From Macrostomum lignano (lineage: Eukaryota), in the NCBI GenBank assembly GCA_002269645.1, contig NIVC01000859.1, forward strand, positions 248,001-312,000: 64,000 nucleotides of DNA. Direction: 5' to 3'. A program made the translations under genes and the position numbers. Shown piece after piece: positions 9,191 through 59,733 of the stretch. Position 1 is the stretch's first letter. Every line of letters starts with the position of its first letter. Under the pieces are notes generated by a model. It was not told the origin of the DNA and did no database searches. It worked only from the letters and a program-made list of their open reading frames with translations.

Positions 9191-9535
9191 TAGCGGTGTC
9201 TATTTTTAGCACTCAGAATTCCCAGACTTCTCATTCCCGTCCGCGGCTGCACTCGACCCCAGCCTACACGGACCAATAGCAGCGTTCCTTGGCATATCTA
9301 GCGTACTATCACTGTGCGCACTGTGTGGACTCTCTAGGCTAGCCTGTGTGGGTCCACACGTGGACTCACTGGCTAGCCAGGTATTTTTTTGTGTAGTGGA
9401 TTGTCTGGCTAGCCCACGGCCGTTAGGTGGGCATAAATAGGCAGGCAGCCTCCCCCCTCACAGTTTAAACCCCATTACCCCGCACCACGTACATTGGCAA
9501 GGCCACTGAATGCGGCAGAGTAATGGAAACAACAA

Positions 9536-11085
9536 ATATTTTCGATTTCCAAGTAATTGTCAATTAGCGCTCTTTACTAAATAAAATAAAATTCCACTTT
9601 CCTCGGAATCACGATGCCATCTCCCTTGGTTCCCGTGCTATGACATTCTAAATTTATGAACATTAGAACATTATGAACATATGAACTAAATTCATATTTT
9701 TTAGCTCAAGCACTGTTACACACTGCCGCCGCGACCGCCGGCGCCGGAGCAGCAGCAGCAACAGCAGCGACACCAGCCGCAGCACCAGCCGCAGCAGCAG
9801 CAGCAGCACCAGCCGCAGCACCAGCCGGAATATGGCGCCGGTCGCAGCGCGCCAGAAGGTCGTCCAGAAAAGTTATTTGCACTTTTTGCTGTTGCAAAAT
9901 CAAAACTCCAGTATTGGATTTTCTACTGTAAAGACTCCAGTATTGGATCGGTCGTCCAATTGTTTTCTCGGCAGTCCAATATATGTTTTCGTGAACCATT
10001 CATCGAAAAATAAAAAAATCAGCACCCAGAAATTGTCAAGAATAATAAATAATCAGTTTCGCTCCAAGTGCGATGTTGAATTTTACTTTATTTTGACTCT
10101 GGCTGCCAAAATGTGTGTCTGTATCTGTGTTATACAATTACTAGTACAATATACAATACAATTACTTCTCTAGTTTAAAAAATAGAGGCGTAAAATGGAG
10201 GCTGAAAAATGTTTTCGCAAGTAAAAGCACGTCGATTGTGAGTTGAATTAAGTCAATGAGGCGTTGTCTCCTTTTGCGGCCTTTCTCTTTTGGCGCTGCG
10301 TCTCTGTTATACTCTGTTTAAAAAACAAAAAAGTGTACTCGTTTTTGTAAACGTTTATTTTGTGTGTAGTTTGTGTTTTGTGAGTACTAGTAGGTTTCGT
10401 TATTGCTACTTGTAGTAGCCGAAGCTGCTTATTAAACCAATGAATATCTTATCACAAAGGCTAAGTGGCAAATCATCTATGGCATTTCAGCTTTTCAAGC
10501 CTTTCAATTTCAAGCTTTTCAATGAAGGTGGAAGAATATATGCAGGCAGGCTCAGAAGGCATGGGTGCTGACACAATCGAGCCCGCACCTGTCGGTGCTC
10601 AGTTTGTTTGCCCAGTTGGCAAATTTGCCATCTGGGTAAACATGCAGGGCCGACCCGCACAGGTGCGGGATCGGTTGTGCCCATGTCTTCTGGGCGTCGG
10701 AGGTGCTGCAGGCGGCCGTCGGCACGCCGCGCAGACCTACCAATACTCTGGAGGGAACTCCGTAAGTACTCATCCTATGTTATTACTTCCCTTTCCTTGC
10801 CACTTGCTCTCGCTCTCTCGCTCTTGCTCTCACTCTCGCTCTCGCTCTCATGCTCTCGCTCTCTCGCTATCACTCTCGCTTTCGCTCTCACGCTCTCTCT
10901 CTCTTGCTCTCACTCTCGCTTTCGCTCTCACGCTCTCGCTCTCTTGCTCTCACTCTCGCTTTCGCTCTCAAGCTCTCGCTCTCATGCTCTCGCTCTCATG
11001 CTCTCGCTCTCTAGCTATCACTCTCGCTTTCGCTCACACTCTCTCTCATGCTCTCACGCTCTCGCTCTTACTCTCGCTTTAGATA
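9536..11085 (+). pseudogene. Permuted fragment of the 38-42 kb orphan gene: intron 2 end and exon 3 start (9705-9827) fused to the upstream region, exon 1 (10522-10761) and an expanded (TCTCGC)n intron 1
   Basis: Near identity to 39455-39700 and 37760-38880. Exon 1 reads MKVEEYMQAG...YSGGNS followed by gtaagt. Confidence 0.8.
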
Positions 11086-23868: not shown

Positions 23869-23897
23869 GCGTGCATGCACGGGATTATTTTGACTAG
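23869..23897 (+). mobile_element. Helitron-type 3-prime terminus
   Basis: gcgtgcatgcacggg hairpin, then attattttga, then CTAG followed by T. The 5-prime end was not located. Confidence 0.5.
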
Positions 23898-23936
23898 TAA
23901 ATAAACGAAATAAATACACATATTTATTTGGCGCTT

Positions 23937-28968: not shown

Positions 28969-29685
28969 CATCTTTCAATATGTACTTGATGTATCTGATA
29001 TGTTATATGTATTCTTTTCTATCCCCTCGCCTGCACTCTGCATGATCTCATATTTACCCCAACGTGAGGAATCAGGAATAAGAATTTGAGCTTGAGATTA
29101 AGAAATTGGCAAAACATTAGCAAAAGCTGGGTATACCTGCACATCAGTTCCACTCTCATGCCTTATAAATTGATAGCTGACCGCAGACCATGCAGTCTAT
29201 CTTGCATCTCGAAAAAGGTGCCATGTGCCATATATCTCCAAAACTTACCCCATAACTCAAAGATCTCTTGATCTTTCTAGTTCTCTGCTCTCAATTCTCA
29301 TTTCTCCTTTACTATATAGCACGCACTCTTCTCTCGTGTCATCTTCTCTCGATCTCTCTCTCATCTTCTAATATGTATTTGATGTATCTGATATGTTATA
29401 TGTATTCTTTTCTATCCCCTCGCCTGCACTCTGCATGATCTCATATTTACCCCAACGTGAGGAATCAGGAATAAGAATTTGAGATTGAGATTAAGAAATT
29501 GGCAAAACATTAGCAAAAGCTGGGTATACCTGCACATCAGTTCCACTCTCATGCCTTATAAATTGATAGCTGACCAGACCATGCAGTCTATCTTGCATCT
29601 CGAAAAAGGTGCCATGTGCCATATATCTCCAAAACTTACCCCATAACTCAAAGATCTCTTGATCTTTCTACTTCTCTGCTCTCTG
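28965..29685 (+). repeat. Tandem duplication of a ~320-bp unit (28965-29290, 29360-29685); diverged copy at 22340-22505
   Basis: aatatgta.ttgatgtatctgat...gatctcttgatctttcta occurs twice. Confidence 0.9.
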
Positions 29686-34565: not shown

Positions 34566-36165
34566 TCCAGCACAGGCTGTAACCGCGATAGCAGCATGCG
34601 GTTGAACAGCTTCGCGGCGCAGGACTGTAGGCAGATGCCTTCTTCTTCTTCTTCTTCGGGCGTGCTCGGGCCAGGGCCCATGGCACCGGGCGTCAGATGG
34701 CGCCCGCCTTCCCGAGGAAGTTCAACACCGCGACGCAGTTCTCGAAAACTGCCGCGGGCTCCGGGCTTGGCCCCCAGAGGCGGCAGCGGTGAGATGTCAG
34801 GGCGGGGCAGGAGATCAGCAGATGGGCCGCCGTCTCCTCTCCATCACCACAGAAGCGGCAGGTGGGGGCCACGTCATCGCCGATGGCGGCCTGGAAGCCC
34901 CGCAGGGCCGGGCAGCGGTCGGCGCGCAGCTGGCAGATCAGCCGCTCCTGCCGCCGCGTGAGGTCGCTTGTCGGCTGAGGCGGCAGGCGGCCCGCCGTGC
35001 AGGCAAGGTGCCAGGCAAGCGAGCTCGTGCTCGCCGCCTCGGTGGCCGCCGCGTTGTAGATCTGGTGCCAGCGGGCGAGGCAGTGGCGGCGGACGGCAGC
35101 CTGCGCGGCAGCTAGCGGGACGGGCGCGGTGCCTTGCGCCAGCGTGGTGCCTTGCTTGGCGATCTCGTCCACGGCCTCGTTGCCTGGGATTCCCGCGTGG
35201 CCAGGCACCCACTGCAGGTGGACCGAGGTTCCCCGGGCCGCGAGGTCGGCGAGGGTAGGCAGATGCCTCGATGCTCCTCGAGCTTGGTGGTGCCCGGCTT
35301 CTTTGGAATGGCGACGATGTGCGCCGTGGTCCATTCGTTTGGCGCCACTTCACCGGAAAGCACGCGGTTTATCACTCTGGCAACCTCAGTGGCCACGCAG
35401 TGGATTTGCAGCGCCTCGGTGGGCACCTCGTCCGGACCAAGCGCTTTGCCGCCCGGCGACTGCCGAGCGAACTTCACAACGTCGGCTGTGCTGACTGGGG
35501 CAACGTTGAAGCTCTCCTCCGCCGGCTCAGATTTTCTGGAAGCGGAGGGGGCGGCGCGTTGACAATGGCGGCGAAGAACTCGCGCAGCTTGTTCCTGCGC
35601 TCATCCGGAGTGTCGCCTGCCAGGTTGAGCGCGATGCGCCGCTTTCGCCCCGTTAGAGTGTTGATGACGGACCAGGCCACGCGCCCTCTGGCATCGGGCC
35701 CTGCGGCAGAGACGGCTTAGATGGCGTCATCGACAGCGGACTGCTGCCGCTGCAGGTAGACAGCCGCCAGAGCCTCCTCCGCCTCGCGAGTTTGCCGCCC
35801 ACTCAGACGGAGCCTCTCCAGATCTTCCCTCGCTTCGTCGATCGCGGGGTCGTCCTGCCAGACCGGCTGCCCGCGCTGGGCCGGTCGCATCAGCGGGACT
35901 GCTTGCTCCGCAGCGGCTCGAACTGCAGCGCTCACCTCCGCGTACTCGGCTCCTCCACGCTTGTCGCCCAGCGCAGTGACAAAGGCACCGGCAAAGCGAC
36001 GTCGCGTCTCGGCGTCCCTGAGCGCGCGGTAGTAGCGCCGCGGTGGCCGCTTTGGCGGACGGTAGAGCGGGTCCCGAAGCCGAAGGTCGCAGATGAGCAG
36101 CCGATGGTCGGACCGCAGAGCCAGCGGCGTAATGGTGCGGCAGTTGATGACGCGGCGGCGCCACT
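34566..36165 (-). mobile_element. RTE-like LINE ORF2 fragment (endonuclease C-end to RT domain 1), frameshifted and interrupted by a nested LINE
   Basis: RSDHRLL (APE end), GKALGPDEVP, EWTTAHIVAIPKKPG..EHRGICL, then after the insert QSCAAKLFNRMLLSRLQPVL. Confidence 0.85.
34641..35254 (-). mobile_element. 5-prime-truncated RNase H-bearing LINE (I/Ingi-like) with a (GAA)n tail and 14-bp TSD
   Basis: LQWVPGHAGIPGNEAVDEIAK (RNase H), CRFC-x8-H-x4-C knuckle, stop codon, gaagaagaa tail. gtaggcagatgcct occurs at 34627-34640 and 35255-35268. Confidence 0.9.
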
Positions 36166-36640: not shown

Positions 36641-38014
36641 GACGATTTGAAAATAACTAATAATCATAAAAGAACTATAAATGAATTGACATTTCAAAGT
36701 TTCAAATATTAAGAAATGTAACTTTTTAGTACTTTTTAGCTCTCAGTAAAATTGGTGTACAACTGCTTAGAGATTTGCTACTGCAGAACTTCTCGAATAT
36801 TAGTGAGATTTGCTCAGCGACTGTGCAAAACTGCTTATAGACAAGCGCTAAACTGCTAAGAAGCCACCCGGAGGGGGCTAAATGGCTAGTTTGAGCTATA
36901 GTTCTTTGAGTTATTTCTTTAAAACTCAAATGTGCCTTAACGAGTAGTATATACAGCCAGAATTAACAATCATACATGTCCATGTATGGAAATTAATACA
37001 TCGATGATCATGTATGGCTATTCTGCCATCCATGGAATGAGCATGAAATCATCTACATGTATGAACATGGATCGGTCCATACATGATCAGGGATGATGCA
37101 TGGATGGGTGCAATGCATGGATCATCCATGATCTGGCCATGATTCCGGCCCTGGTGATCTACATTAATCTACTTCTACATGCAACAGTGTCCTTCCCAGC
37201 CGGCCCGCACGCGTACCAAGATTACATGTACAACTCGAAACAATACTTACATGTACTGTTGTACGCAGGGGCGAGAATTAGTGTACTACAATCTCATCTA
37301 CTACCAAATGAGTCATCTAATTATGTATAGCTCACATCGTATATGTACATTAATCCCATGTACAATAACTCATGTACTCGTATATGTACATTAATCCCAA
37401 ATTGTAGCTGTACATGTCTATCCCAAATTGTATATGTACGCAGTACATACTTCTACATTAATCTCCAATACGACTCCAGTATTGGAGTTTCTACTGTAAG
37501 GACTCCAGTATTAGATCGGTAGTCCAGTTTAGCTCTCAGTGCAATGCTAAACTGCTCAGCGGCTCGGGTAGTTTTGATTAGTTGTAAGTTGCGGGAGCAC
37601 CTGACTACTTGCAGAATCTTTACCATGAGCAGCTTGGTCTGGCGTGAATTTGAGAAGTGGACCTGGATTACAATTTGCAGTCGGCAATTTGGCATTTTGC
37701 AGAGTGGTTTTCACGCTATGCGAACAACATGTTCTTATAGATTTCGGCAACCCGAGTCGAATATGGCGCCGGTCCCAGCGCGCCAGAAGGTCGTCCAGAA
37801 AAGTTATTTGCACTTTTTGCTGTTGCAAAATCGAAACTCCAGTATTGGAGTTTCTACTGTAAAGACTCCAGTATTGGATCGGTAGTCCAATTGTTTTCTC
37901 GGCAGTCCAATATGTTTTCGTGAACCATTTATTGAAAAATAAAAAAATCAGCACCCAGAAATTGTCAATAATAATAAAAAATAAGTTTTGCTCCAAGTGC
38001 GACGTTGAATTTTA

Positions 38015-39893
38015 CTTTATTTTGACTCTGGCTGCCGAAATGTGTGTCTATCTGTGTTATACAATTACTTTCTAGTTTAGTTTAAAAAATAGAGGCGTAA
38101 AATGGAGGCTGAAAAATGTTTTCGCAAGTAAAAGCACGTCGATTGTGAGTTGAATTAAGTCAATGAGGCGTTGTCTCCTTTTGCGGCCTTTCTCTTTTGG
38201 CGCTGCGTCTCTGTTATACTCTGTTTAAAAAACAAAAAAGTATACTCGTTTTTGTAAACGTTTATTTTGTGTGTAGTTTGTGTTTTGGGAGTACTAGTAG
38301 GTTTCTTTATTGCTACTTGTAGTAGTAGCCAAAGCTGCTTATTAAACCAATGAATATCGTATCACGAAGGCTAAGATATGGATTATCCTTTGTGATTAGC
38401 CTGCGAGCTTCGAACTTCTGTGTGAATTCGGTTAGCCAAATTCAAATCCAAATCTAAACTTTGCAGCAGCAGCAACAGGACCAACATGAAGGTCGAGGAA
38501 TACGTGCAGGCAGGCCCAGAAGGCATGGGTGCTGACACAATCGAGCCCGCACCTGTCGGTGCTCAGTTTGTTTGCCCAGTTGGCAAATTTGCCATCTGGG
38601 TAAACATGCAGGGCCGACCCGCACAGGTGCGGGATCGGTTGTACCCATGTCTTCTGGGCGTCGGAGGTGCTGCAGGCGGCCGTCGGCACGCCGCGCAGAC
38701 CTACCAGTATTCTGGAGGGAACTCCGTAAGTACTCATCCTATGTTATTATTTCCCTTTCCTTGCCACTTGCTCTCGCTCTCTCGCTCTTGCTCTCACTCT
38801 CGCTCTCGCTCTCACGCTCTCGCTCTCATGCTCTCACGCTCTCGCTCTCTTGCTCTCACTCTCTCTTTCGCTCACACTCTCGCTCTCTTGCTGACCTGAG
38901 AGCTGTATCCCACCCATCCCATTTCATTTTACTCCAGAGAATGTACTGGCGCGCGGGTGCCGACTGGGTCTTTTGGACCCACGGGGTGCAGCTGCGGGGG
39001 GGCGACCTGCGTAACCTGCCGGCCATCGTGCAGGGGTCGCTCGCCCCGCAGCCGCAGCAGCCGCAACAGCCGCAGCAGCCGCAGCAGCCGCAACAGCCGC
39101 AGCAGCCGCAGCAGCCGCAGCAGCAGCAACAGCATCAGGCGGCAGCAGCGGTCATCGACCGCCTTGATGCTGCGCAGCTGCGCCAAGTGCTGGAGCTGCC
39201 TCCGGTTGGTAGGTGATGAGTATTTACTCGGTGAACACTGTGTGAGAGCTTAAATGCTGAGAGCTTAAATGCTGAGAGCTTAAATGCTGAGAGTTTTTGC
39301 TGAAAGCTAATTTTTCTTTGTTTGGCAATTTTTTTTTGCCATTGCCTGGCAATGTGCATTAGAACAGATTGAAGGATTTTAACTGTTCTTACTTAGAAGT
39401 AGGATGTATCAGACGCAACTGTGACTAAAGTGATATAAGAAACTAAAATTTGTACAAATATTTTCGATTTCCAAGTAATTGTCAATTAGCGCTCTTTACT
39501 AAATAAAATAAAATTCCACTTTCTTCGGAATCACGATGCCATCTCCCTTGGTTCCCATGCTATGACATTCTAAATTTATGAACATTAGAACATTATGAAC
39601 ATATGAACTAAATTCATATTTTTTAGCTCAAGCACTAATGCAGACTGCCGCCGCGACCGCCGGCGCCGGAGCAGCAGCAGCACCAGCCGCAGCAGCACCA
39701 GCCGCAGCAGCACCAGCCGCAGCAGCACCAGCCGCAGCAGCAGCAGCCGCAGCAGCAGCAGCCGCAGCAGCAGCAGCAACAGCAGCAGCAGTAGCAGCAC
39801 CAGCCGCAGCAGCACCAGCCGCAGCAGCAGCAGCAACAGCAGCACCAGCCGCAGCAGCACCAGCCGCAGCAGCAGCAGCAACAGCAGCACCAG

Positions 39894-39928
<35 letters not shown>

Positions 39929-41814
39929 CCTTTATTTTGACTCTGGCTGCCGAAATGTGTGTCTATCTGTGTTATACAATTACTTTCTAGTTTAGTTTAA
40001 AAAATAGAGGCGTAAAATGGAGGCTGAAAAATGTTTTCGCAAGTAAAAGCACGTCGATTGTGAGTTGAATTAAGTCAATGAGGCGTTGTCTCCTTTTGCG
40101 GCCTTTCTCTTTTGGCGTTGCGTCTCTGTTATACTCTGTTTAAAAAACAAAAAAGTATACTCGTTTTTGTAAACGTTTATTTTGTGTGTAGTTTGTGTTT
40201 TGGGAGTACTAGTAGGTTTCTTTATTGCTACTTGTAGTAGTAGCCAAAGCTGCTTATTAAACCAATGAATATCGTATCACGAAGGCTAAGATATGGATTA
40301 TCCTTCGTGATTAGCCTGCGAGCTTCGAACTTCTGTGTGAATTCGGTTAGCCAAATTCAAATCCAAATCTAAACTTTGCAGCAGCAGCAACAGGACCAAC
40401 ATGAAGGTCGAGGAATACGTGCAGGCAGGCCCAGAAGGCATGGGTGCTGACACAATCGAGCCCGCACCTGTCGGTGCTCAGTTTGTTTGCCCAGTTGGCA
40501 AATTTGCCATCTGGGTAAACATGCAGGGCCGACCCGCACAGGTGCGGGATCGGTTGTGCCCATGTCTTCTGGGCGTCGGAGGTGCTGCAGGCGGCCGTCG
40601 GCACGCCGCGCAGACCTACCAGTATTCTGGAGGGAACTCCGTAAGTACTCATCCTATGTTATTATTTCCCTTTCCTTGCCACTTGCTCTCGCTCTCTCGC
40701 TCTTGCTCTCACTCTCGCTCTCGCTCTCACGCTCTCGCTCTCATGCTCTCACGCTCTCGCTCTCTTGCTCTCACTCTCTCTTTCGCTCACACTCTCGCTC
40801 TCTTGCTGACCTGAGAGCTGTATCCCACCCATCCCATTTCATTTTACTCCAGAGAATGTACTGGCGCGCGGGTGCCGACTGGGTCTTTTGGACCCACGGG
40901 GTGCAGCTGCGGGGGGGCGACCTGCGTAACCTGCCGGCCATCGTGCAGGGGTCGCTCGCCCCGCAGCCGCAGCAGCCGCAACAGCCGCAGCAGCCGCAGC
41001 AGCCGCAACAGCCGCAGCAGCCGCAGCAGCCGCAGCAGCAGCAACAGCATCAGGCGGCAGCAGCGGTCATCGACCGCCTTGATGCTGCGCAGCTGCGCCA
41101 AGTGCTGGAGCTGCCTCCGGTTGGTAGGTGATGAGTATTTACTCGGTGAACACTGTGTGAGAGCTTAAATGCTGAGAGCTTAAATGCTGAGAGCTTAAAT
41201 GCTGAGAGTTTTTGCTGAAAGCTAATTTTTCTTTGTTTGGCTTTTTTTTTTTGCCATTGCCTGGCAATGTGCATTAGAACAGATTGAAGGATTTTAACTG
41301 TTCTTACTTAGAAGTAGGATGTATCAGACGCAACTGTGACTAAAGTGATATAAGAAACTAAAATTTGTACAAATATTTTCGATTTCCAAGTAATTGTCAA
41401 TTAGCGCTCTTTACTAAATAAAATAAAATTCCACTTTCTTCGGAATCACGATGCCATCTCCCTTGGTTCCCATGCTATGACATTCTAAATTTATGAACAT
41501 TAGAACATTATGAACATATGAACTAAATTCATATTTTTTAGCTCAAGCACTAATGCAGACTGCCGCCGCGACCGCCGGCGCCGGAGCAGCAGCAGCACCA
41601 GCCGCAGCAGCACCAGCCGCAGCAGCACCAGCCGCAGCAGCACCAGCCGCAGCAGCACCAGCCGCAGCAGCAGCAGCCGCAGCAGCAGCAGCCGCAGCAG
41701 CAGCAGCAACAGCAGCAGCAGTAGCAGCACCAGCCGCAGCAGCACCAGCCGCAGCAGCAGCAGCAACAGCAGCACCAGCCGCAGCAGCACCAGCCGCAGC
41801 AGCAGCAGCACCAG

Positions 41815-41849
<35 letters not shown>

Positions 41850-41850
41850 C
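38015..41850 (+). repeat. Near-perfect tandem duplication, period 1,915 bp, junction at ~39930
   Basis: Paired ORFs 38486/40401 and 38572/40487 are offset by 1915. The junction gcagcaCTTtattttg has CTT microhomology. Confidence 0.95.
38486..39940 (+). pseudogene. Truncated copy of the 3-exon orphan gene (exons 38486-38725, 38938-39208, 39627-39940)
   Basis: Same splice sites as the downstream copy; exon 3 is cut in the Ala tract by the duplication junction and ends APLF*. Confidence 0.7.
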
Positions 41851-42200
41851 CTTCGCTGCCGCCGCCGACACCCCCGCCGCCGCCGCCGGCAACTCTGCCA
41901 CCGCCGCCGGCAACTCCGCCACCGCCGCCGACACCCCCGCCGCCGCCACCGGCAACTCCGCCACCGCCGCCGACACCCCCGCCGCCGCCGCCGCCGCCGC
42001 TGACGCAGAGGGAGAGGCGGCGGCTGCAAACGCAGCCGGCGAGAGAGGCCCGGGCTGCCAAGCGGCGCAAGGTAAACCCGCAACTTAAATACGCGCTGTG
42101 CAACTACGAGTTGTTTTCTGGCATTCTCGCAGGTCTCTGGAAGGGGGGCAACGCGTGCCTTGCGGAAAGTCCATACTTGTCAGTTTCTTTTGTATACTAA
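40401..42200 (+). CDS. Three-exon orphan gene (40401-40640, 40853-41123, 41542-42200), about 389 aa: Trp/Cys-containing N-domain, PQQ tract, poly-Ala/Pro tract, basic NLS-like end
   Basis: TCC|gtaagt...ttactccag|AGA is phase 0 and G|gtaggt...ttttttag|CT is phase 1; both join open frames. Exon 1 differences versus the 10522 copy are mostly synonymous. Confidence 0.7.
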
Positions 42201-44404
42201 CAGTTTAGCCTAAAAGTAGACAAGATTGACCAACTTGACCTTTTGACTAATAGGTTTCCTTAGCTGATAAAACAGCCCTTAAAAGGGCAGTTTCAACAAA
42301 ATTCTATCTTTGCTTCAGGCTTAGAAACTTGCTAAAGTCATAAATAGCCTAGGCCTATAGAGCAGAGATCTAAGGAATAAAGATAAATATATTTCAGTTT
42401 TAGTTAATTCTGTACATTTGTAGTATAACAGCACAACTGATTCAGTGAATCAGTGATTCTTATATTATGCTGTATTATATATAGGCCTATATATACACCA
42501 CATTAATACAGGATATGGATATCAACGCCTATGTATCTACTGTAAAAAAATGAAATGCCTTCGCGAAAAAAGCTTTCATATAGAAATGGCAGACAGTCGT
42601 CAGTCAGAAATCAAACTTACCGTCCAAGTCCAATGCTTAGACTCCTAAGACGCGTTACGTCATTAAGTCTTAAGTCCACATTAACTTACCCAGATAAATT
42701 TATGACTTATCTGGCCTATAGAGTCTATTCTACTTCTACAGGCTGGGTTCCCACTCAAGGGTGGATGCATATCTTATGGCCCCGTTTTAAATTAATTTAA
42801 ATCGGGTTGAATTTACCAAGTAGAAAAACTCACTAATCGATCATTTTAAAAACGAGTGCGGACAATTTTTATTGGACGCGGCAAAAATTCCTCCTATTGC
42901 CAAGTGCCATACCATGCCATTTACGTTACTTGCTACTCATAGTAAAAATGCAACAAAACATTGAGATAATTTTCGCTTAAACTAATCATTTTTATTGAGC
43001 TAAGAGCTTACTTCTCCTTGTTTAAAAGCTAACAGCTAACAAAGCTAACAAAAGCTAACAAAATGAATAATCAATAATTAGACAATTCTTACAAGTTAAC
43101 AAGTTCATACCATTAGTAAGGTGCTAAAAATTAGCAATTCGATTTAAGTATTTTCCAAAATGATCAAACAGTTTTAAAGAGTTATACAACAACAGTCTAA
43201 AAATGTTGGTTGCGCAACTTGGTGCTAGTGCTAGCGCTCCTGTTTGTGGCTGGCGCTCTTTGATACGCTGAGTATGCTCTAATCTTATCCTAAGTAAGTT
43301 ATTAACTAAACAATTTAATTTGGCAGAAAATTCTAAACAGGCTCTAAGAAGCAGTAGACTCCAGTTAGCAGTCCATAAAAACTTAACGTTTTAAAAAGTT
43401 TTTGAACGCGTTTGATGAGAAATAAATTACAAAGAATTCCCCGGGTCGTCAAGCAGAAAGTTTCTTGCTTGTCCTGAAAAGGGCCGTTTTTAAACATTTA
43501 CTAGTTACTACTGCTTTTGCTCGGTCAGAACAGGGTCCTGCAGGCACATTAAAATTAAGAATTCATGTTAAGAGTTTTGAAGCATTCGAATAAAAGTTCA
43601 ATAAAATCAATTCCCTTGGTTATAGTTATAGTTTGTGTGTTGGTCCTGAGCTGAAAGAACGGTTTTGAAGAATTACTATTTACGTTGATCTGCCGGTTCA
43701 GAGCAATGCAGTTACATGAAATTCAATAGTTCATGCTAAGAGTTTTGCTGTGCTCTTTAAATACCTGTCCCCAAGTGAGAGTTTGAGTGGTTGCCCTGAA
43801 AAGGGCCGTTTTATCGATTACTATTTACTTCACTGTTTACCCATAGCGGGCTTTTGCCATTTTGCTATTTATAGCTTACTTAAGCCATTATCCTAACTGG
43901 CTTAGTAGGTAATATATAAATAATTACCTATTATTTCACTAAGATTAATAATTTAAATCTTCCATTTATATATATAGTCTTCCTAAAAGCTTTAAACAGC
44001 AGAATCAGTCACAAATGGAGTTTTACATACCCACTGCCACTACCCAGTCATCATGTGACAGCTGATAGGTCCATTTATAGTTATATTACCTTAATTAACT
44101 TATCTGGGCATGGCATCGTCAAATCAAATCCCCTTCTTGAGGGGAACCCCTTCTCCCCCCAGACCCCTTACCCTTATGCATGTAATATTCCAGCAACATT
44201 GGAAAGTCGGTTCGGCATGCACCGGCAGAGGTCGGCACTCTATATATGCAGTAATGTCTATTGGACTATTCTGAAATCAAAATCAAATTTGCGAGAAAAA
44301 GCTCTGCGGCTGCGGGCTGCGGGCAAATCTGGGCGGAAAAGCTCTCTGTGCCGTCGGCGGGCAATTCGACTGCAGGTGCTACTCGTGCTCGCGCTGCCGC
44401 CTTC

Positions 44405-45285
44405 CCTCTTCTCCCTTCACTCTAACCCCATCTCCCTTCACTCTAACCCCATCTCCCTTCACTCTAACCCCATCTCCCTTCACTCTAACCCCATCTCCCT
44501 TCACTCTAACCCCATCTCCCTTCACTCTAACCCCATCTCCCTTCACTCTAACCCCATCTCCCTTCACTCTAACCCCATCTCCTTTCACTCTAACCCCATC
44601 TCCCTTCACTCTAACCCCATCTCCTTTCACTCTAACCCCGTCTCCCTTCACTCTAACCCCATCTCCCTTCACTCTAACCCCATCTCCTTTCACTCTAACC
44701 CCATCTCCCTTCACTCTAACCCCATCTCCCTTCACTCTAACCCCATCTCCCTTCACTCTAACCCCATCTCCCTTCACTCTAACTCCATCTCCCTTCACTC
44801 TAACCCCATCTCCTTTCACTCTAACCCCATCTCCCTTCACTCTAACCCCATCTCCCTTCACTCTAACCCCATCTCCCTTCACTCTAACCCCATCTCCTTC
44901 ACTCTAACCCCATCTCCCTTCACTCTAACCCCATCTCCCTTCACTCTAACCCCATCTCCCTTCACTCTAACCCCATCTCCCTTCACTCTAACCCCATCTC
45001 CTTTCACTCTAACCCCATCTCCTTTCACTCTAACCCCATCTCCTTTCACTCTAACCCCATCTCCCTTCACTCTACCCCATCTCCCTTCACTCTAACCCCA
45101 TCTCCCTTCACTCTAACCCCATCTCCCTTCACTCTAACCCCATCTCCCCTCACTCTAACCCCCTCTCCCTTCAATCTACCCCATCTCCCTTCACTCTAAC
45201 CCCATCTCCCTTCACTCTAACCCCCTCTCCCTTCACTCTAACCCCTCTCCCTTCACTCTACCCCCTCTCCCTTCACCCTACCTTT
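44405..45285 (+). repeat. Minisatellite M1, 21-bp CTCTAACCCCATCTCCCTTCA
   Basis: Direct tandem array; it explains ORFs 44055-45095 and 44379-44882. Confidence 0.97.
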
Positions 45286-47976
45286 ATATTTCACTATACA
45301 CGCACCCTCTGTGCACGCTCTGTGCACCCTCTGAAGTAGTGCACGCAGTCTGCCTAAACCACTTAAATGCTGCCATGCAAATATTACTTCTCCACTATGA
45401 CCTCTCTTTTCATCAGTAATTTCCCATAGTATTCCCATGGTAACAGCTCTATCTCACCCAGTCTAGCGCGTATCTCAACCAGTTGAGCACATATATCTCA
45501 TCTCAACCAGCCTACTAGTAGCACATATTTCAACCAGTCTAGCACATATCTCACCCAGTCTGCACATCTCATAGTCTTGATGGGTTTCGACCTTTCAGGC
45601 CCCTTGCGAGGAAGCCGTCGGGCCTCAGGTCTCAGAAATAAATCAAATAGAGTCCTGGCCCCCCACTCCTGTCAGATGGTCAGCCCCATGGTAGCTTGAT
45701 CGTGTGGCGAGCAGTCTAGGTCCTATAGCTAAGAGAGTGACAGCGAGAGACGAGCAGGGAGAATTTTGAAAGTAGAAATTAGCTAATCCGCAGATCAACT
45801 AACTCGCTACCACCAGCCCGTACGTCCTGGCTCACCACACCGGGACTCTCGAAATCGGGCTTCCGACTAGAAGGGGCTTTGCACTTACCTGCCAACTAGT
45901 GTATTTTTGCTGTCTATCTCGAAGTCATAGCCGATGATAAGGGACACTGCTGGGACTAGATCGCATTGGCCATGCAGGTACAGAGGGGACTTGTGCAGGG
46001 GATTCTTGCAGTGGCGAGTCTATGGGGTAGCTAAATGTACTATTACATTGCTAAATACGAAGATATGTACTTTTGGCCTTCAACGCGCCAACTAGCCTCT
46101 CATAGCGCTGATGATAGACTAACTCGAACTTCAGAGACCGCATGATTCATCACCCGAGCCGCTTGGCTACCCTAGAGTGCACAAAGTACATCTCTGGCGC
46201 CGATTCTGCACTTCTGGCAGTTTTGCTCACTGATTTGATTGATTGATCGACTGAAAACCGCCTTGCCATTGGTCCACTGTGACCGGCGCCTACTAGCTTA
46301 GCTACTCATCTGAGCCATCGGCGAACAAAGAAATAAAACCGATAAAAATAACTGTTAGATTTAACCTTCTCCTTAGATCACTTCACACTTCAGATTGAAT
46401 TGGAGTTTAGACTACTAGCAGTATTATTAAGTGATTTCTGCCTCAGCAACAGCACTACTGAACAAAATGAGCAAAAGTGTGCGCCTAATCCAGCTACTGA
46501 AACAGGGGACAGATAGGGAATCACCCAATCAAGCAAGTCTAGGTAGCTTCTCACCCAACCAATCAGAAACTCAACAGCCGGAGACCAGGTAATCCACAGT
46601 GACCGAATCGGCTTGATGCTCTGTAGCTGTAGACTCGGGATGATGCTGTCACAGTCTTCGCAGATAGCTAGCAGGTGATGATCTTAACTTTGATGTTCGC
46701 TGCTGATGACCGGGGGATTCGTCCTTGATGATGATGGGGGGGGGGGAAGTCGCAATCCGGGGATCAAGAAACGACGGTCGCGCTCCTGGATGTCTCAAGC
46801 TAGGCTAAGGTCCCCGGAGGTTGAGGTCCGAGCGGGGTCGTAAAAAGATGACAGGTGCGGCCATAAATCACTCAAAATCGCAACAAAATGATTTATGACT
46901 TTTCGCGTAGGATTGACAGAAATTAATGAAAAAATATACATTAGAAAGCTCTTATTAAATAGAAAGTGAAGATAATGAAGAGAAATCGCTAATCGCTAAT
47001 CCCAAAGTACCTTTAGGGGTAAAACGCATAGCTGTCAAAGCTGTCACACGCTTGAGTGAACCCGAACAATAGGCTCTGACCTCATAAATCTTGATGGCCT
47101 GTCAAAATGATGAGAAAAAAGCTACCGCCCGCATCCTCTCAGACCATCTGGCGCCAGTCTCAACACTGAGTGAGGCGCAGGTGGCTGTCAGACCAACTTC
47201 GGAAGCGATGATTTATGACCCAAAAAGCTATGCCCATGTTATTATGACTACTAGTATGACCAGACATTATATCTAGTATAGATTTTATGACTATTCGCAG
47301 AAAAAGGATAAAAATGCCCAGTGCCCACCTGTTAGTAGGCCGGTAAGTTTAGAGCCCATGTGCTAGCGCGGGGTTTGGAAAAAAGTGCGTCCTCATCAGT
47401 CTGAAAAACACTGAGACTTATGCTGGGTGGCCAATAGTTACGAGCTACTTTAATTTAAATATGTATCAAACTGCATTTATATTGGAGGCTTTATATTGCT
47501 ATTTTTTCACAGAGTTTACACGATTCTAGCTAGGATTTTATCCCTAATTCTTAAATTATGAGAAATGTCCTTTATGACTCAATCCTATTATGCAGATCAG
47601 GGGTCAGACAGTCTTTTTTACTTCAAGAGCCTCGTTTTGATGATGATGAGTTCAGCTTATGACTGCGGCACGGATAAGAGTGGAAAGGCGAGAGATAGGA
47701 TGAGACTGGTCAGAGAATAGACAAAACAGCAGATAAGAGAAGATAAAAGAGGAGAGGAGAAGTGGGCGAGAGGAGAAAGAAGAGAGAAGAGGAGAAAGGG
47801 GTGAGAGGAGAGGAAAGGGAGGAGAGGAAAGAGGGTGAGAGGAGAAGGAAGAGAGAAGAGGATAGATAGGTGAGAAGAAAGGGGAACTGGAGAGATCCGA
47901 AGGGTAGAGAGTGTATACTCGTAGAGAAGAGTGGAGAGGAAGGAGAGGGGAGAGAAGAGAAGAGAGCAGAGAAGAG

Positions 47977-48472
47977 TAGGGATTGCAATCCCGGGATCCC
48001 GGTATCCCCAAATCCCGGGACTAATTTTTGTTAATAATTTTTACAAAAAGTGCTGTAATCTAAACATAATTAGGCCCACAAGTAGTTTATTATACTGCAC
48101 TAATTTCCGTTAATTGCCTCACGTCGTGTGGCACCTTTTTAAACCCCGCATCACAGATTTAAATGTGAAATTAATTCCAGTTTAAATTTTGATATGATTT
48201 GCTTCTTTACTACTAATTAGTACATTTATACTACTCACTTCAATAGGTCACAAGATAATGCTGTTTATCATCTACAAATACATCATTATCTCTATAACAA
48301 TAAAAAATTAAGCAAAAAAGCGTTTAGCGCATATTTCGCCTTAAAATTTCAACCTATAAGCATAAAAATCTGTATTATTCTGATCCCGGGATTCAATCTC
48401 GGGATTGGCCAAATTCCGGGATTAAATCCCGGGATGCCGGGATCACAAAAATCCGGGATTTTGCAATCCCTA
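47977..48472. mobile_element. hAT-type MITE, 496 bp
   Basis: 12-bp TIR TAGGGATTGCAA/TTGCAATCCCTA, 8-bp TSD gagaagag (47969-47976, 48473-48480), and subterminal CCCGGGAT repeats. Confidence 0.9.
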
Positions 48473-48814
48473 GAGAAGAGACAAAACCCTGAGCACGAAC
48501 GATCTGCGCATTATAAATGCGATTTATAATTAGATTCGTGGTGGAGAGAATATCAGTGCGAGAAAGAGACCAATGGACGACAGATAATGCCTTTTACAAT
48601 AAATATATATATATATGTGCATGTGCTTTTCGATGCCTGTGCTTTTCACAGCACCCCCCTCGGTCACCACCCCCCAGGTAAGTCTGTGGGAGCTTTCCAA
48701 TTTCAGGGGGCGTCGCCATGGATTTTATGGTGGTGGGGGGACAAAGCCAAGATTAAGAATTCAATTAAAGTTCCCATATTGTTTAGGGAATCAGTGTGTT
48801 TTTAGCATTCATTT

Positions 48815-49470
48815 TGGCGCCGCAGGCACTCATTTATTGGCATTGACACCATAGGCAGGCACTCATTTAGACTCCACAGGCACTCATTTTGGCGCCGAAG
48901 GCAGGCACTCATTTTGGCGCCAAAGGCAGGCACTCATTTTGGCGCCGAAGGCACTTATTTTGGCGCCACAGGCACTCATTTTGGCGCCGAAGGCAGGCAC
49001 TCATTTTGGCGCCGAAGGCAGGCACTCATTTTGGCGCCGAAGGCAGGCACTTATTTTGGCGCCGCAGGCAGGCACTCATTTTGGCGCCGAAGACAGGCAC
49101 TCATTTTGGCGCCGCAGGCAGGCACTCATTCTGGCGCCGCAGACAGGCACTCATTTTGGCGCCGAAGACAGGCACTCATTTTGGCGCCGAAGGCAGGCAC
49201 TCATTTTGGCGCCGCAGACAGGCACTCATTTTGGCGCCGAGGGCAGGCACTCATTTTGGCGCCGAAGGCAGGCACTCATTCTGGCGCCGCAGACAGGCAC
49301 TCATTTTGGCGCCACAGACAGGCACTCATTCTGGCGCCGCAGACAGGCACTCATTTTGGCGCCGAAGACAGGCACTCATTTTGGCGCCGAAGGCAGGCAC
49401 TCATTTTGGCGCCGCAGACAGGCACTCATTTTGGCGCCGAGGGCAGGCACTCATTTTGGCGCCGAAGGCA
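48815..49470 (+). repeat. 21/25-bp minisatellite (AGGC[AGGC]ACTCATTTTGGCGCCG(C/A)); partner array at 55985-56525
   Basis: Tandem array downstream of the ggggcgtcgccatggattttatgg head; it explains the three overlapping repetitive ORFs. Confidence 0.95.
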
Positions 49471-50904
49471 GGCAGGCAAGGTGAATTGAAAATACATGTA
49501 ACCTTAACACAGCCAGTTAAAAACTTTGCCTTAACACTCTGCAGTGACAAAGGTGACACAGTCTATAAATAATTAAAGACACTGGCTTTATTTAACTCAG
49601 GATCAAGCTTCATATATATACAGTTTTTCTTACAAATCAATCAATATTTCGGCTTTCAATTTTTGATCAATTTTTGAAACTTTAGGAGAGCTGGCGGCCC
49701 CGCCCCCAGCCTTACGCCCACGCTAAGCTAACAAAAATCAGGTGCACTCAAAGAAGGTTGAATTTTAAGAAAAAATTGTTGCTCTTATGCTGCTACTCGC
49801 TATGGTGTTACTAAAAATCATCAATTCGATTTACAATTCTTTTCCAAAATAATCGAACAGCTTAAAAAGAAAGATTTAAAGAAATGAACTTTTGTGACCC
49901 TGAAAAGGGCCGTTTGAAAGATAAATTTTTTAATTTGCTGCCGTAACAGGAGCAACAAAGGCACATAAAACGCAGGTACAACTTAGTGCTAGCGCCCCCT
50001 GCGACGGCGTCCTCAGTGATGGCGCCCGTTTGTGGCTGGCGCCCTTTGGTGCGCGCATTTTGAAAAATTTAATTTGGCAACGAATTCTAAATAAAAAGGT
50101 TTTAAACAGCAGTAGTAGTGAATGCAAAATTAAATAAAGAGTTTCGGTGTGTTCAAATAAATGGTTGAATGAATTAAAACTAACTTCCAAGGTCCCCAAA
50201 AAATGTGCGGTAGCCCTGAAAAGGGCCGTTTTATACATATACAATTTTCTCTGCTCTGTCAGAACGGAACAAGGCAGGCACAAAGAACACACGCTAAAAT
50301 AATGTTTGCTGCGCACATTAGTGCTAGCGCCCCTAGCGATGGCGCTCGATTGTTGGTGGCTGGCGCCCTTTAGTGCGCGCGTTAATTTTAGCAAATAGTT
50401 TATTTAGTAGCAAATCCTAAACAGCAGGGTTCTAACTAAACATTAGTAGTAGAGCAAATGCAAAATTTAAAGTTTAAAAATAATTCAACGCGTTGGTTGA
50501 AAAATAAATTAAAAAGAATTCCCCTGGTCGCCAAGCAAGTAGTGTGCTGGACCTGAAAAGGGCCATTTTAAATATTTACTCTACTTTGTTTGGCCAGAAC
50601 AGGGTAATGCAGGCACATTAAAAAAAATACACACGAAAAGAGTTTTCAAGTGTTCGAATTAAATGACATAAAATTAATTCTCCAAAGTCCCCCCTAAAGT
50701 AAGCTTTGTGCTGGCCCTGAAATGCCGTTTTGAAGATTTACTATTTAGATTGCTTTGCCAAAACATAGCAATGGCAAATTAAATTTAAGTATACATGCTA
50801 AGAGTTTTTTCCGTTTTCTAATTTTCTAATTCTCTAATTAAATAAACAATTATGAACTCCCAGGTCCTCAAGTGAGAGCTTGAGTGTACTTGCCCCTGAA
50901 AAGG

Positions 50905-55144: not shown

Positions 55145-55640
55145 TAGGGATTGCAATCCCGGGATCCCGGTATCCCCAAATCCCGGGACTAATTTTTGTT
55201 AATAATTTTTACAAAAAGTGCTGTAATCTAAACATAATTAGGCCCACAAGTAGTTTATTATACTGCACTAATTTCCGTTAATTGCCTCACGTCGTGTGGC
55301 ACCTTTTTAAACCCCGCATCACAGATTTAAATGTGAAATTAATTCCAGTTTAAATTTTGATATGATTTGCTTCTTTACTACTAATTAGTACATTTATACT
55401 ACTCACTTCAATAGGTCACAAGATAATGCTGTTTATCATCTACAAATACATCATTATCTCTATAACAATAAAAAATTAAGCAAAAAAGCGTTTAGCGCAT
55501 ATTTCGCCTTAAAATTTCAACCTATAAGCATAAAAATCTGTATTATTCTGATCCCGGGATTCAATCTCGGGATTGGCCAAATTCCGGGATTAAATCCCGG
55601 GATGCCGGGATCACAAAAATCCGGGATTTTGCAATCCCTA
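55145..55640. mobile_element. hAT-type MITE, duplicate copy
   Basis: Same TIR and 8-bp TSD (55137-55144, 55641-55648). Confidence 0.9.
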
Positions 55641-59621: not shown

Positions 59622-59733
59622 AACAGCAAGCATCCCCCAGAAAGCAGGCATCCCCCAGAAAGTAAGCATCCCCCAGAAAGCAAGCATCCCCCAGAAAGCA
59701 AGCATCCCGCAGATAGCAAGCATCCTCCAGATA
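59622..59733 (+). repeat. 18-bp repeat (agcaagcatcccccagaa), about 6 units
   Basis: Direct tandem array just before the 12-bp satellite. Confidence 0.85.

What the first reader, a model, noticed from the sequence alone, without database searches (positions are those of the whole stretch)
38015..42200. Unrecognised 3-exon gene family: compact Trp/Cys domain plus poly-Q, poly-A and poly-P tracts and an NLS, amplified in tandem
The ORF track splits this into nonsense frames, but splicing gives one ~389-aa product. It has a ~115-aa N-domain (FVCPVGKFAIWVN...CPCLLG...YQYSGGNSRMYWRAGADWVFWTHG), then (PQQ)n, (AAAAP)n and (TPPPPPPA)n, then QRERRRLQ...AAKRRK. I do not recognise the domain. A folded head, a long disordered linker and a basic tail suggest a nuclear regulator or scaffold (inference). 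The upstream copy encodes a version lacking the Pro tract and basic tail, which could act as a truncated paralogue. This is the best candidate for a novel system in the window.
Basis: partly seen in the sequence, partly recalled or inferred. Interest (0 to 1): 0.72.

Follow-up and report, generated by a model that had tools for sequence, protein, structure and literature searches.

The report
Macrostomum orphan gene with exonic hairpin
This is a real gene of unknown function, found so far only in the flatworm Macrostomum lignano and recently part-duplicated in a repeat-rich region; it is ordinary except that its first coding exon folds into an unusually stable RNA hairpin and its exons differ from a sister copy far more than its introns do.

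Summary
Window 38015-42200 is a 1,915-bp tandem duplication (about 99.8% identical outside repeat tracts) of a spliced gene with canonical GT-AG introns. Copy 1 is cut off inside the poly-Ala tract (274 aa). A third fragment lies at 9.5-11.1 kb.

The window is Macrostomum lignano. The only relative among billions of proteins is the M. lignano hypothetical protein Mlig020696g1, an RNA-seq-based model that reads straight across the predicted exon 2/3 junction. Its locus also carries exon 1.

Exon 1 is under strong, frame-specific purifying selection (dN/dS 0.11). The exon-2 half of the supposed "domain" evolves almost neutrally (0.92). AlphaFold finds no fold (pLDDT 31.6). The bipartite basic tail is conserved, and a fourth exon after a 61-nt intron is likely.

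So this is a lineage-restricted, mostly disordered, probably nuclear protein, not a novel system.

Two features were unexpected. First, exon 1 holds a ~150-nt sense-strand hairpin (-106 kcal/mol) that is built by synonymous codon choice. Second, between paralogues the exons are 16% diverged while the introns are only 5% diverged. That may reflect exon-limited exchange, or an RNA-seq polishing artefact in the public assembly.

The parts
39930..40400 (+). Copy 2: 5' flank and leader. It includes a possible (trans-)splice acceptor, tttgcag|CAGCAG, at 40381/40382, 19 nt before the ATG.
   Evidence: Homologous to 38015-38485, to copy 3, and in part to L001 7134-7420 (p = 0.086). The acceptor is read from the sequence; its use is inferred.
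40401..40640 (+). Copy 2 exon 1: 80 codons, MKVEEY...YSGGNS. This is the strongly constrained part of the protein.
   Evidence: First start codon of its ORF. Against L001, dN/dS is 0.11 and 28 of 42 differences fall at third positions (p = 1e-5). The other two frames give 1.6 and 2.4.
40426..40577 (+). Sense-strand RNA hairpin inside exon 1. The stem is about 63 bp. The apex, 40482-40525, encodes FVCPVGKFAIWVN.
   Evidence: Stability: -105.9 kcal/mol, z = -10.1 on the + strand, against -86.1 on the - strand. Against synonymous-codon permutations of exon 1, z = -8.2. Stem appositions: 61 Watson-Crick, 5 G.U, 0 A.C. The apex has 0 of 44 nt changed against L001. It is the only structural outlier in the unit.
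40641..40852 (+). Copy 2 intron 1 (212 nt), containing a CTCTCG-type microsatellite.
   Evidence: GT-AG boundaries. TRF array at 40685-40807. Its unique ends are 98-100% identical to L001.
40853..41123 (+). Copy 2 exon 2: RMYWRAGADWVFWTHG..., then (PQQ)n, then AAAAVIDRLDAAQLRQVLELPPV.
   Evidence: Aligned to P0001. The first 38 codons give dN/dS 0.92. In the AVIDRLDAAQLR block, 2 of the 3 changes are synonymous. The 9-nt GCAGCCGCA array is at 40963-41048.
41124..41541 (+). Copy 2 intron 2 (418 nt), containing a 15-nt minisatellite (3.4 copies here, about 21 in L001).
   Evidence: GT-AG boundaries. The junction is confirmed by P0001. It is 94-98% identical to L001. TRF array at 41158-41208.
41542..42071 (+). 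Copy 2 exon 3: AQALMQT, then (AAAAP)n, then the Pro tract, then the basic tail LTQRERRRLQTQPAREARAAKRRK.
   Evidence: In frame with exon 2, phase 1. 15-nt array at 41585-41851 and Pro-tract arrays at 41854-41993. The tail is conserved in this frame in both L001 tail copies, with a 3-nt in-frame indel.
42072..42132 (+). Probable 61-nt intron 3 (gtaaac...ctcgcag). If it is retained, the ORF runs on to the stop at 42198-42200.
   Evidence: The GT-AG boundaries are conserved in all three tail copies. The only indel inside it is 4 nt, whereas the flanking indels are 3 and 6 nt.
42133..42213 (+). Probable exon 4 (VSGRGATRALRKVHTCQFLLYTNSLA*). Homology to the L001 copies ends near 42188.
   Evidence: The four-exon CDS is 1,122 nt and encodes 373 aa. 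Three-way tail alignment.
38015..39929 (+). Copy 1: truncated tandem duplicate. Exons are 38486-38725, 38938-39208 and 39627-39929, with the stop at 39938-39940. It lacks the Pro tract and basic tail and carries C53Y.
   Evidence: Offset of 1,915 bp, 98.5% identity by BLAST, with few substitutions outside repeats. Product is 274 aa. The junction ...gcagcacc|tttattttgac shows microhomology of about 3 nt.
37760..38014 (+). Upstream flank of copy 1. Copy 3 shares it, but it lies outside the 1,915-bp duplication.
   Evidence: Matches 9829-10090, read directly. L001 homology starts near 37967.
9532..11078 (+). Copy 3: an older fragment. It runs from the intron-2 tail through the start of exon 3 (9705-9828, short poly-Ala), fused at about 9828/9829 to the 5' flank, then exon 1 (10522-10761), then an expanded intron-1 microsatellite. 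It is cut off at about 11078.
   Evidence: BLAST identity 90-93%, and sequence reading. Exon 1 is 97.5% identical at protein level, with 5 synonymous and 2 nonsynonymous differences.

Best explanation
What it is: a genuine protein-coding gene restricted, as far as public data show, to Macrostomum lignano. It lies in a repeat-rich region.

How the copies arose: a very recent 1,915-bp tandem duplication, with one breakpoint in the recombination-prone GCN (poly-Ala) repeat of exon 3, produced a truncated upstream copy and left the downstream copy complete. An older duplication, also broken in the poly-Ala tract, left the fragment at 9.5-11 kb.

The protein (function inferred): it is mostly intrinsically disordered (Gln, Ala-Pro and Pro tracts). 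Only two parts are clearly constrained. One is the 80-residue exon-1 peptide, with conserved C30, C53, C55 and H68. The other is a C-terminal bipartite basic motif (RR-x12-KRRK). The most likely working model is a nuclear protein. The exon-1 peptide would be the specific binding module, the low-complexity tracts a flexible spacer, and the basic tail the import signal.

The mRNA (function inferred): exon 1 also carries a ~150-nt sense-strand hairpin that starts 26 nt after the AUG and is built by synonymous codon choice. It most likely limits expression in cis, either by impeding translation or by acting as an RNase III substrate.

Shown here: the gene structure, the coding constraint, the paralogue, the duplication history, and the existence and non-accidental nature of the hairpin. 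Inferred: nuclear localisation, the binding role, and what the hairpin does.
For: Gene structure and paralogue:
- Canonical splice sites and an in-frame 389-aa product.
- P0001, from an RNA-seq-guided annotation (PMC5730564), spans the exon 2/3 junction.
- Locus L001 has the same exon-intron layout, including exon 1.

Coding constraint:
- Exon 1: dN/dS 0.11, frame-specific, third-position excess p = 1e-5.
- Copy 3 against copy 2: 5 synonymous and 2 nonsynonymous changes.
- The basic tail is conserved in the window's frame in three copies. In its 14-codon core all changes are synonymous. Indels are 3 and 6 nt in coding parts and 4 nt in the mini-intron.

No known family or TE domain.

Hairpin:
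- z = -10 against shuffles, and stronger on the sense strand.
- z = -8.2 against synonymous permutations.
- 5 G.U and 0 A.C appositions. The apex is invariant at synonymous sites, P about 0.0015.
- It is the only structural outlier in the unit.

Machinery: M. lignano has Drosha, Pasha and Dicers (PMC5594548).

Duplication junctions with microhomology in repeat tracts.
Against: - There is no direct expression evidence for the window copies; P0001 concerns the paralogue.
- The paralogue L001 has an in-frame TAG in exon 1. Its Pro/basic tail is out of frame with the start of exon 3, so at least that copy may be decaying.
- AlphaFold2 finds no fold in residues 1-185.
- The exon-2 segment evolves nearly neutrally.
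- In L001, 9 of the 63 stem pairs are broken and only 1 change is compensatory, so only the apical stem is clearly conserved.
- The 3' end of copy 2 departs from both L001 tails after about 42188, so its true terminus is uncertain.
- The setting among satellites and retrotransposon fragments is typical of poorly expressed DNA.
Confidence: 0.6

Rival explanations
1. The window copies are non-functional, decaying duplicates (unprocessed pseudogenes) of a functional family member elsewhere in the genome. On this reading the intact ORF of copy 2 reflects youth, not selection.
For: - Copy 1 is truncated and carries C53Y. Copy 3 is a fragment cut by other repeats.
- Copy 2 loses homology to both L001 tails after about 42188.
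- The surroundings are satellites, non-LTR fragments and dispersed repeats.
- The L001 paralogue itself carries a stop and a frame change.
Against: - Copy 2 keeps an open frame through 347 or more codons, including about 700 nt of slippage-prone repeats.
- The differences between copies 2 and 3 are 5 synonymous to 2 nonsynonymous.
- The constraint measured against L001 shows the family as a whole is coding.
Confidence: 0.17
2. The unit is part of, or was captured by, a transposable element, and its 'gene' is a TE-borne or TE-shuffled ORF.
For: - Partial copies with different junctions occur in a TE-rich region.
- The Pro-tract and basic-tail module also occurs in L001 behind a different intron, as an inverted duplicate.
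- Homology between loci stops at the unit's edges, about 37967 and 42188.
- Similar Pro-rich plus basic mini-ORFs sit in another repeat at 5383-5540 and 11284-11405.
Against: - No transposase, RT, integrase or other TE domain.
- No terminal inverted or direct repeats bound the unit.
- No further copies in about 180 kb of other M. lignano loci.
- The paralogue survived the annotators' filter against transcripts that overlap repeats (PMC5730564).
- The duplication junctions look like microhomology-mediated segmental events, not insertions.
Confidence: 0.1
3. The locus is primarily a hairpin-RNA gene (a small-RNA precursor), and the ORF is incidental.
For: - An exceptional hairpin favoured on the sense strand.
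- Tandem duplication of hairpin units is known for hpRNA loci (established knowledge).
- The annotated paralogue's ORF skips exon 1, which there contains a stop.
Against: - Exon 1 has strong frame-specific purifying selection, also outside the hairpin.
- The exon ends in phase at a canonical donor.
- There is no Rfam match.
- The stem of about 63 bp is short for an hpRNA and long for a pre-miRNA.
- Most of the stem is not maintained in L001.
Confidence: 0.07

Closest known systems
Macrostomum lignano hypothetical protein BOX15_Mlig020696g1 (PAA48475.1, UniProt A0A267DGY6), contig NIVC01004137.1
   Same: - A true paralogue: 60% identity over exon 2 and the start of exon 3.
- Identical intron positions.
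- Nearly identical intron sequences, including the same micro- and minisatellites.
- The same basic tail and mini-intron in the DNA, and an exon-1 homologue upstream.
   Different: - The annotated ORF starts at the Met equivalent to M82.
- Its exon 1 has an in-frame TAG.
- It has no poly-Ala tract.
- The annotated frame misses the Pro tract and basic tail.
- Its unique exon sequence is about 16% diverged against about 5% for the introns.
- Its hairpin is weakened to the apical stem.
Hairpins in the 5' part of DGCR8 mRNA that are cleaved by the Microprocessor (established knowledge, not tested here)
   Same: A stable stem-loop embedded at the start of an mRNA's coding region, which could let an RNase III enzyme or the ribosome set the transcript's output.
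   Different: - No cleavage or small-RNA evidence here.
- The stem of about 63 bp is twice the pri-miRNA size.
- The host gene is an orphan, not a miRNA-pathway gene.
- No Rfam match.
Drosophila hairpin-RNA (hpRNA) endo-siRNA loci (established knowledge)
   Same: A young, lineage-specific, sometimes tandemly duplicated inverted repeat that is transcribed from one strand.
   Different: hpRNAs are non-coding, usually have stems of hundreds of bp, and derive from a separate target gene. Here the palindrome sits inside a constrained ORF.
Snake-venom phospholipase A2 and cone-snail conopeptide genes, where introns are more conserved than coding exons (established knowledge)
   Same: Paralogues whose introns are far more alike than their exons.
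   Different: In those families the protein is under diversifying selection (dN/dS of 1 or more). Here the excess lies at synonymous sites of exon 1 (dS 0.75, dN/dS 0.11), and nonsynonymous divergence does not differ significantly from intron divergence.

Membership tests
Mlig020696-like family (Macrostomum-restricted, unnamed) | Sequence homology outside the low-complexity tracts | tested here: met
   BLASTP E 7e-24, 60% identity over 115 aa, including MYWR..WTHGV.LRG.DL.NLPAIVQGS and AAAVIDRLDAAQLR. Exon-1 peptide is 85% identical by tblastn.
Mlig020696-like family (Macrostomum-restricted, unnamed) | Same intron positions and phases | tested here: met
   All splice junctions align between the window and L001. 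P0001 reads PPV|AQAL across the exon 2/3 junction.
Any curated protein domain family or solved structure | Significant profile or sequence match | tested here: not met
   Pfam: nothing below E = 0.4. PDB sequences: best hit E = 0.05, spurious. The 1.8-billion-protein HMMER scan found only P0001 plus one spurious repeat protein. A fold search was not run because the model has pLDDT 31.6.
Transposable-element gene | TE catalytic or structural domain in the product | tested here: not met
   No Pfam hit. The RT and RNase H fragments in the window lie elsewhere: 12352-13143, 28346-29089 and 34693-35334.
Transposable-element gene | Defined termini (TIR or LTR) and target-site duplications around the unit | tested here: not met
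   No inverted repeats bound 37760-42213. The copy junctions lie inside the gene's own repeat tracts.
Transposable-element gene | Many dispersed copies | tested here: inconclusive
   Three partial or whole copies in the window, one locus plus one extra tail in L001, and none in L002-L010. A whole-genome census is not possible with these tools.
hpRNA / endo-siRNA locus | Long, transcribed, strand-specific inverted repeat | tested here: met
   About 63-bp stem, -105.9 kcal/mol, stronger on the sense strand. Transcription itself was not shown.
hpRNA / endo-siRNA locus | Non-coding precursor | tested here: not met
   dN/dS 0.11 in the exon-1 frame, against 1.6 and 2.4 in the other frames.
hpRNA / endo-siRNA locus | 21-23-nt small RNAs produced from the stem | not testable with these tools
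   No small-RNA read data are available here.
Canonical animal miRNA precursor | 60-100-nt hairpin matching a known family, or with pre-miRNA geometry | tested here: not met
   No Rfam match at gathering or at E <= 1 in the hairpin. The stem is about twice the pre-miRNA length.
Classical bipartite nuclear localisation signal | Two basic residues, a 10-12-residue spacer, then at least 3 basic residues in 5 | tested here: met
   RR-LQTQPAREARAA-KRRK in copy 2. L001 tail La (plus strand) reads KQRRALQTQPAREARAAKRKRK and tail Lb (inverted) reads KEKRRLQTQPAREARAAKRKRK.
Classical bipartite nuclear localisation signal | Confers nuclear import | not testable with these tools
   This needs a reporter fusion in vivo.

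The most novel reading that the evidence does not exclude
The sharp switch in divergence at every splice site may be real. Between paralogues, exons are about 16% diverged and exon-1 synonymous sites 48%, while introns are about 5% diverged and still carry the same micro- and minisatellites. If so, it would record exon-limited sequence replacement, meaning gene conversion templated by spliced RNA or cDNA, or by an intronless diverged copy, that overwrote the exons and left the introns in place. If that happens repeatedly, it would be a mode of gene-family evolution that respects splicing and has rarely, if ever, been documented in animals.
Probability: 0.15. Interest if true: 0.8.

Novelty: new member of a known kind. 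Interest (0 to 1): 0.38.

Why it matters
As a gene it matters modestly. It adds an unannotated, taxonomically restricted, low-complexity and probably nuclear protein to the M. lignano catalogue, and it corrects the only annotated paralogue, which has a missed exon 1 and a wrong C-terminal frame. M. lignano has RNAi, in situ hybridisation and transgenesis, so the function can be tested directly.

The two side observations are of wider interest if they hold. The first is a coding exon whose synonymous sites are spent on a 63-bp sense-strand hairpin, which would be a clean case of overlapping protein and RNA-structure codes. The second is a divergence pattern between paralogues that follows splice sites. 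That pattern either exposes RNA-mediated exon exchange or warns that RNA-seq polishing of the Mlig_3_7 assembly created chimeric exon/intron sequence. Such an artefact would affect evolutionary analyses of this widely used genome.

Tried and rejected
- Known domain or fold. Pfam, PDB sequences, a word-indexed search of 5.8 billion proteins, an exhaustive HMMER search of 1.84 billion representatives and metagenome contigs found nothing except P0001. AlphaFold2 with the only available 4-row alignment gave pLDDT 31.6, so I did not run a fold search.\n- Known RNA family. Rfam at gathering score and at E <= 1 gave only sub-threshold hits on CAG/CTG repeats. No tRNAs.\n- Structured RNA in the conserved introns as the reason for their conservation. 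A sliding fold scan found no outlier apart from the exon-1 hairpin and repeat-driven stems.\n- Hairpin as a by-product of the peptide. Rejected by synonymous-codon permutation.\n- Directional GC3 shift as the cause of the synonymous excess. GC3 is 0.60 against 0.525, and Ts:Tv is 14:28, so no strong directionality.\n- Mosaic recombination between copy 3 and L001. The shared states polarise simply as ancestral, so recombination is not needed.\n- More family copies through the neighbouring gene. Eight further M. lignano loci contained none. They showed instead that the neighbour is itself a dispersed 5.2-kb repeat.\n- Literature. No paper mentions Mlig020696, and I found no direct precedent for either odd feature.\n- My first guess that the window was from an insect was wrong. 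The organism was settled.


Full report
**1. What is in the sequence**

Reading 37500-42800 and listing ORFs shows GC-rich ORF pieces separated by AT-rich or microsatellite stretches. Joining 40401-40640, 40853-41123 and 41542-42200 gives an in-frame 1,170-nt CDS of 389 aa. The donors are TCC|gtaagt and TTG|gtaggt, and the acceptors follow pyrimidine-rich tracts.

The stretch 38015-39929 repeats at 39930-41844, a period of 1,915 bp at 98.5% BLAST identity. Almost all the differences are indels in the 15-nt GCN array. The duplication junction (...gcagcacc|tttattttgac) lies in the poly-Ala repeat of exon 3. Copy 1 therefore ends ...AAAAAPLF* at 274 aa, without the Pro tract or basic tail, and it also carries C53Y.

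A third, older copy (90-93% identical) lies at 9532-11078. It consists of the tail of intron 2 and the start of exon 3, fused at about 9828/9829 to the 255 bp that precede copy 1 (37760-38014). The 5' flank, exon 1 and an expanded intron-1 microsatellite follow, and the copy is cut off by another repeat. So there were two independent partial duplications, both broken in the poly-Ala tract.

**2. Organism and relatives**

Pfam finds nothing. A word-indexed search of 5.8 billion proteins with the head found nothing. An exhaustive HMMER scan of 1.84 billion representatives found one true hit, P0001. P0001 is hypothetical protein BOX15_Mlig020696g1 of the flatworm Macrostomum lignano. A profile of the conserved exon 2-3 part again found only P0001. 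PDB sequences and metagenome contigs gave nothing.

A neighbouring ORF (26489-27712) is 99% identical to M. lignano Mlig014902g1, so the window is M. lignano.

P0001 aligns at 60% identity over 115 residues (E 7e-24) and reads ...EVPPV|AQALV... across my exon 2/3 junction. GenBank models for this genome derive from RNA-seq-guided StringTie/TACO transcripts (PMC5730564). This is therefore independent support, based on expression data, for that splice in a paralogue.

**3. The paralogous locus**

L001 (contig NIVC01004137.1) has the whole unit:
- 5' flank at 7134-7420;
- an exon-1 homologue at 7901-8140;
- a long intron 1 with the same microsatellite;
- exon 2 at 9998-10314;
- intron 2 with the same 15-nt minisatellite (about 21 copies);
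- exon 3 and the tail.

P0001 was annotated from the Met in exon 2 because L001's exon 1 has an in-frame TAG (codon 52).

P0001's C-terminus is read in a frame that misses the Pro tract and basic tail. In the window's frame the L001 tail reads LTLKQRRALQTQPAREARAAKRKRK, clearly homologous to LTQRERRRLQTQPAREARAAKRRK. P0001's stop codon is created by a change that is synonymous in the window's frame. L001 therefore carries a real or sequencing-derived frameshift, and the window's frame is the conserved one.

**4. Is it coding?**

| Comparison | Result |
|---|---|
| Exon 1, copy 2 vs L001 | 42 differences, split 8/6/28 by codon position (p = 1e-5); dS 0.755, dN 0.082, dN/dS 0.11 |
| Exon 1, other two frames | dN/dS 1.6 and 2.4 |
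| Exon 1, copy 2 vs copy 3 | 5 synonymous, 2 nonsynonymous |
| Exon 2, first 38 codons | dN/dS 0.92 |
| AVIDRLDAAQLR block | 3 changes, all at third positions (2 synonymous) |
| Core of the basic tail | only synonymous changes |

Among the three tail copies, indels are +3 nt in the coding tail, +4 nt inside gtaaac...ctcgcag (42072-42132) and +6 nt after it. This fits a 61-nt intron followed by a short fourth exon. The product would then be 373 aa, ending ...AAKRRKVSGRGATRALRKVHTCQFLLYTNSLA*. Homology to both L001 tails ends near 42188, so the true 3' end of copy 2 is uncertain.

AlphaFold2 on residues 1-185 with the four available sequences gave mean pLDDT 31.6 and nothing above 50. A compact folded head is therefore not supported, although such a shallow alignment leaves this inconclusive.

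The constrained parts are the 80-aa exon-1 peptide and the bipartite basic motif RR-x12-KRRK. In the exon-1 peptide, C30, C53, C55 and H68 are conserved in L001.

**5. The hairpin**

BLAST of the unit against itself showed an inverted self-match inside exon 1, and the repeat finder showed nested palindromes. Folding 40425-40585 gives one hairpin of 63 pairs.

- Stability is -105.9 kcal/mol with z = -10.1 on the sense strand, against -86.1 on the antisense strand.
- Permuting synonymous codons, which keeps the peptide and codon usage, gives -99.4 +/- 5.2 for exon 1 against the native -142.3 (z = -8.2). The structure is therefore made by codon choice, not by the peptide.
- The stem has 61 Watson-Crick pairs, 5 G.U and no A.C appositions, which favours an RNA on the sense strand.
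- Against L001 the apical 44 nt are unchanged, while the rest of the exon differs at 14-25% (P about 0.0015 at synonymous sites).
- Lower in the stem, L001 has 9 broken pairs, 6 wobble-preserving changes and 1 compensatory change. Its optimal fold keeps only the apical stem.
- Nothing else in the unit is a structural outlier, and Rfam has no match.

M. lignano has Drosha, Pasha and Dicers (PMC5594548). Processing is therefore possible but untested. I regard a cis-regulatory role as the most likely function and mark that as inference.

**6. An unexplained pattern**

Between copy 2 and L001 the introns are much more alike than the exons.

| Segment | Identity |
|---|---|
| Intron-1 ends | 98-100% |
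| Intron 2 | 94-98% |
| Exon 1 | 82.5% |
| Exon 2 | 82.7% |
| Start of exon 3 | barely alignable (41% mismatches over the first 40 nt) |

The switch is sharp at the splice sites. The last 80 nt of exon 1 have 18 mismatches against 2 in the first 80 nt of intron 1. The last 60 nt of intron 1 have 1 mismatch against 14 in the first 80 nt of exon 2.

Unique exon sequence differs at 16.1% and introns at 4.8% (p = 8e-8). Exon-1 synonymous sites against introns give p = 5e-17, while nonsynonymous sites do not differ from introns (p = 0.18). Exon-1 changes have Ts:Tv of 14:28 and no strong GC direction, as expected for old, near-saturated divergence. The introns, in contrast, still share the same micro- and minisatellite units, which points to recent common ancestry. 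For scale, M. lignano subgenome copies differ by about 2.2% overall and 1.1% in coding sequence (PMC10733133).

The pattern is not purely exon against intron. The hairpin apex, the AVIDRLDAAQLR block and the basic tail are also conserved.

Candidate explanations:
- exon-limited conversion from a diverged intronless copy or a spliced-RNA template;
- an artefact, because Mlig_3_7 was polished with Pilon using RNA-seq reads as well as genomic reads (PMC5730564). Against this, the 33-nt and 12-nt insertions and the unalignable start of exon 3 are hard to produce by polishing;
- strong constraint on the introns, which I consider unlikely given the shared satellites.

I cannot decide between these with two loci.

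**7. Context and rivals**

The window is full of satellites and retroelement fragments. The Pro-tract and basic-tail module also occurs in L001 as an inverted duplicate behind a different intron.

A TE origin is nevertheless poorly supported. There is no TE domain and no bounding repeats. There are no copies in about 180 kb of other M. lignano loci. The paralogue also passed the annotators' repeat filter.

A pseudogene reading for the window copies cannot be excluded. A purely non-coding hairpin gene is contradicted by the coding constraint.

**8. Verdict**

This is a real, lineage-restricted gene, recently part-duplicated, that encodes a mostly disordered and probably nuclear protein. It is a new member of a known kind (orphan genes), not a novel system. 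The exonic hairpin and the splice-site-bound divergence pattern are the parts worth following up.

Noticed in passing
window 40401-41541 against L001 7901-10992: Between paralogues, introns are 94-100% identical while exons are about 83% identical. The switch in divergence falls at each splice site, and the excess lies at synonymous sites of exon 1 (dS 0.75 against about 0.05 in introns). This is either exon-limited sequence exchange or an RNA-seq polishing artefact in Mlig_3_7.
   Followed up: partly
window 22509-27707: A ~5.2-kb dispersed repeat is present at about 99% identity on at least 9 contigs of the M. lignano assembly. The copies have different neighbouring genes and often sit at contig ends. 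It carries the 475-aa 'hypothetical protein' Mlig014902/Mlig028042, so it is probably an unclassified mobile element rather than a host gene.
   Followed up: partly
L001 11034-11450 (+) and 19400-18914 (-): An inverted duplication of the Pro-tract, basic-tail, mini-intron and exon-4 module together with its downstream flank. The second copy is preceded by a different intron and acceptor, which suggests exon shuffling or a second gene architecture sharing this tail.
   Followed up: partly
window 5383-5540 and 11284-11405: Two copies of a short ORF follow an acceptor-like site. It has a Met, a long poly-Pro run and a basic end (...RRLRRLRSGRLRLL*). The ORF lies inside another repeat family that is also present in L002 and L003. 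It resembles the target gene's Pro/basic tail only loosely, at 73% within low-complexity sequence.
   Followed up: no
window 12352-13143, 28346-29089, 34693-35334 (-): Non-LTR retrotransposon remnants. Two RT C-terminal fragments lie within a repeat present twice in the window (11894-12940 and 27867-28934), whose copies each match the same L002/L003 element at about 97%. There is also an RNase H plus zf-RVT ORF in a 61% GC block. Window 35416-36518 matches L001 14540-15663 at 97%.
   Followed up: partly
window 45299-50223 against 52465-57274: A ~7.1-kb direct duplication at 96-100% identity that itself contains satellite arrays.
   Followed up: no
window 636-2000, 14567-18800, 44302-45200, 48782-49520, 50775-52260, 56254-56575, 59579-60564: Many satellite arrays with periods of 7/14/21, 23, 21, 25, 19, 25 and 12 nt. 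Several have strong GC skew. This gives the window a heterochromatin-like character.
   Followed up: no
window about 9125-9200 (-): By eye this is a tRNA-like fragment, containing gattcgaacc and other matches to a T-arm. ARAGORN does not call it, so it may be a tRNA-derived SINE remnant just upstream of copy 3.
   Followed up: no
window 40381/40382 (also 38466/38467): A strong acceptor-like site, tttgcag|CAGCAGCAAC, lies 19 nt upstream of the start codon and has a counterpart in L001. It is a candidate spliced-leader trans-splice site, given that about 39% of M. lignano genes are trans-spliced.
   Followed up: no
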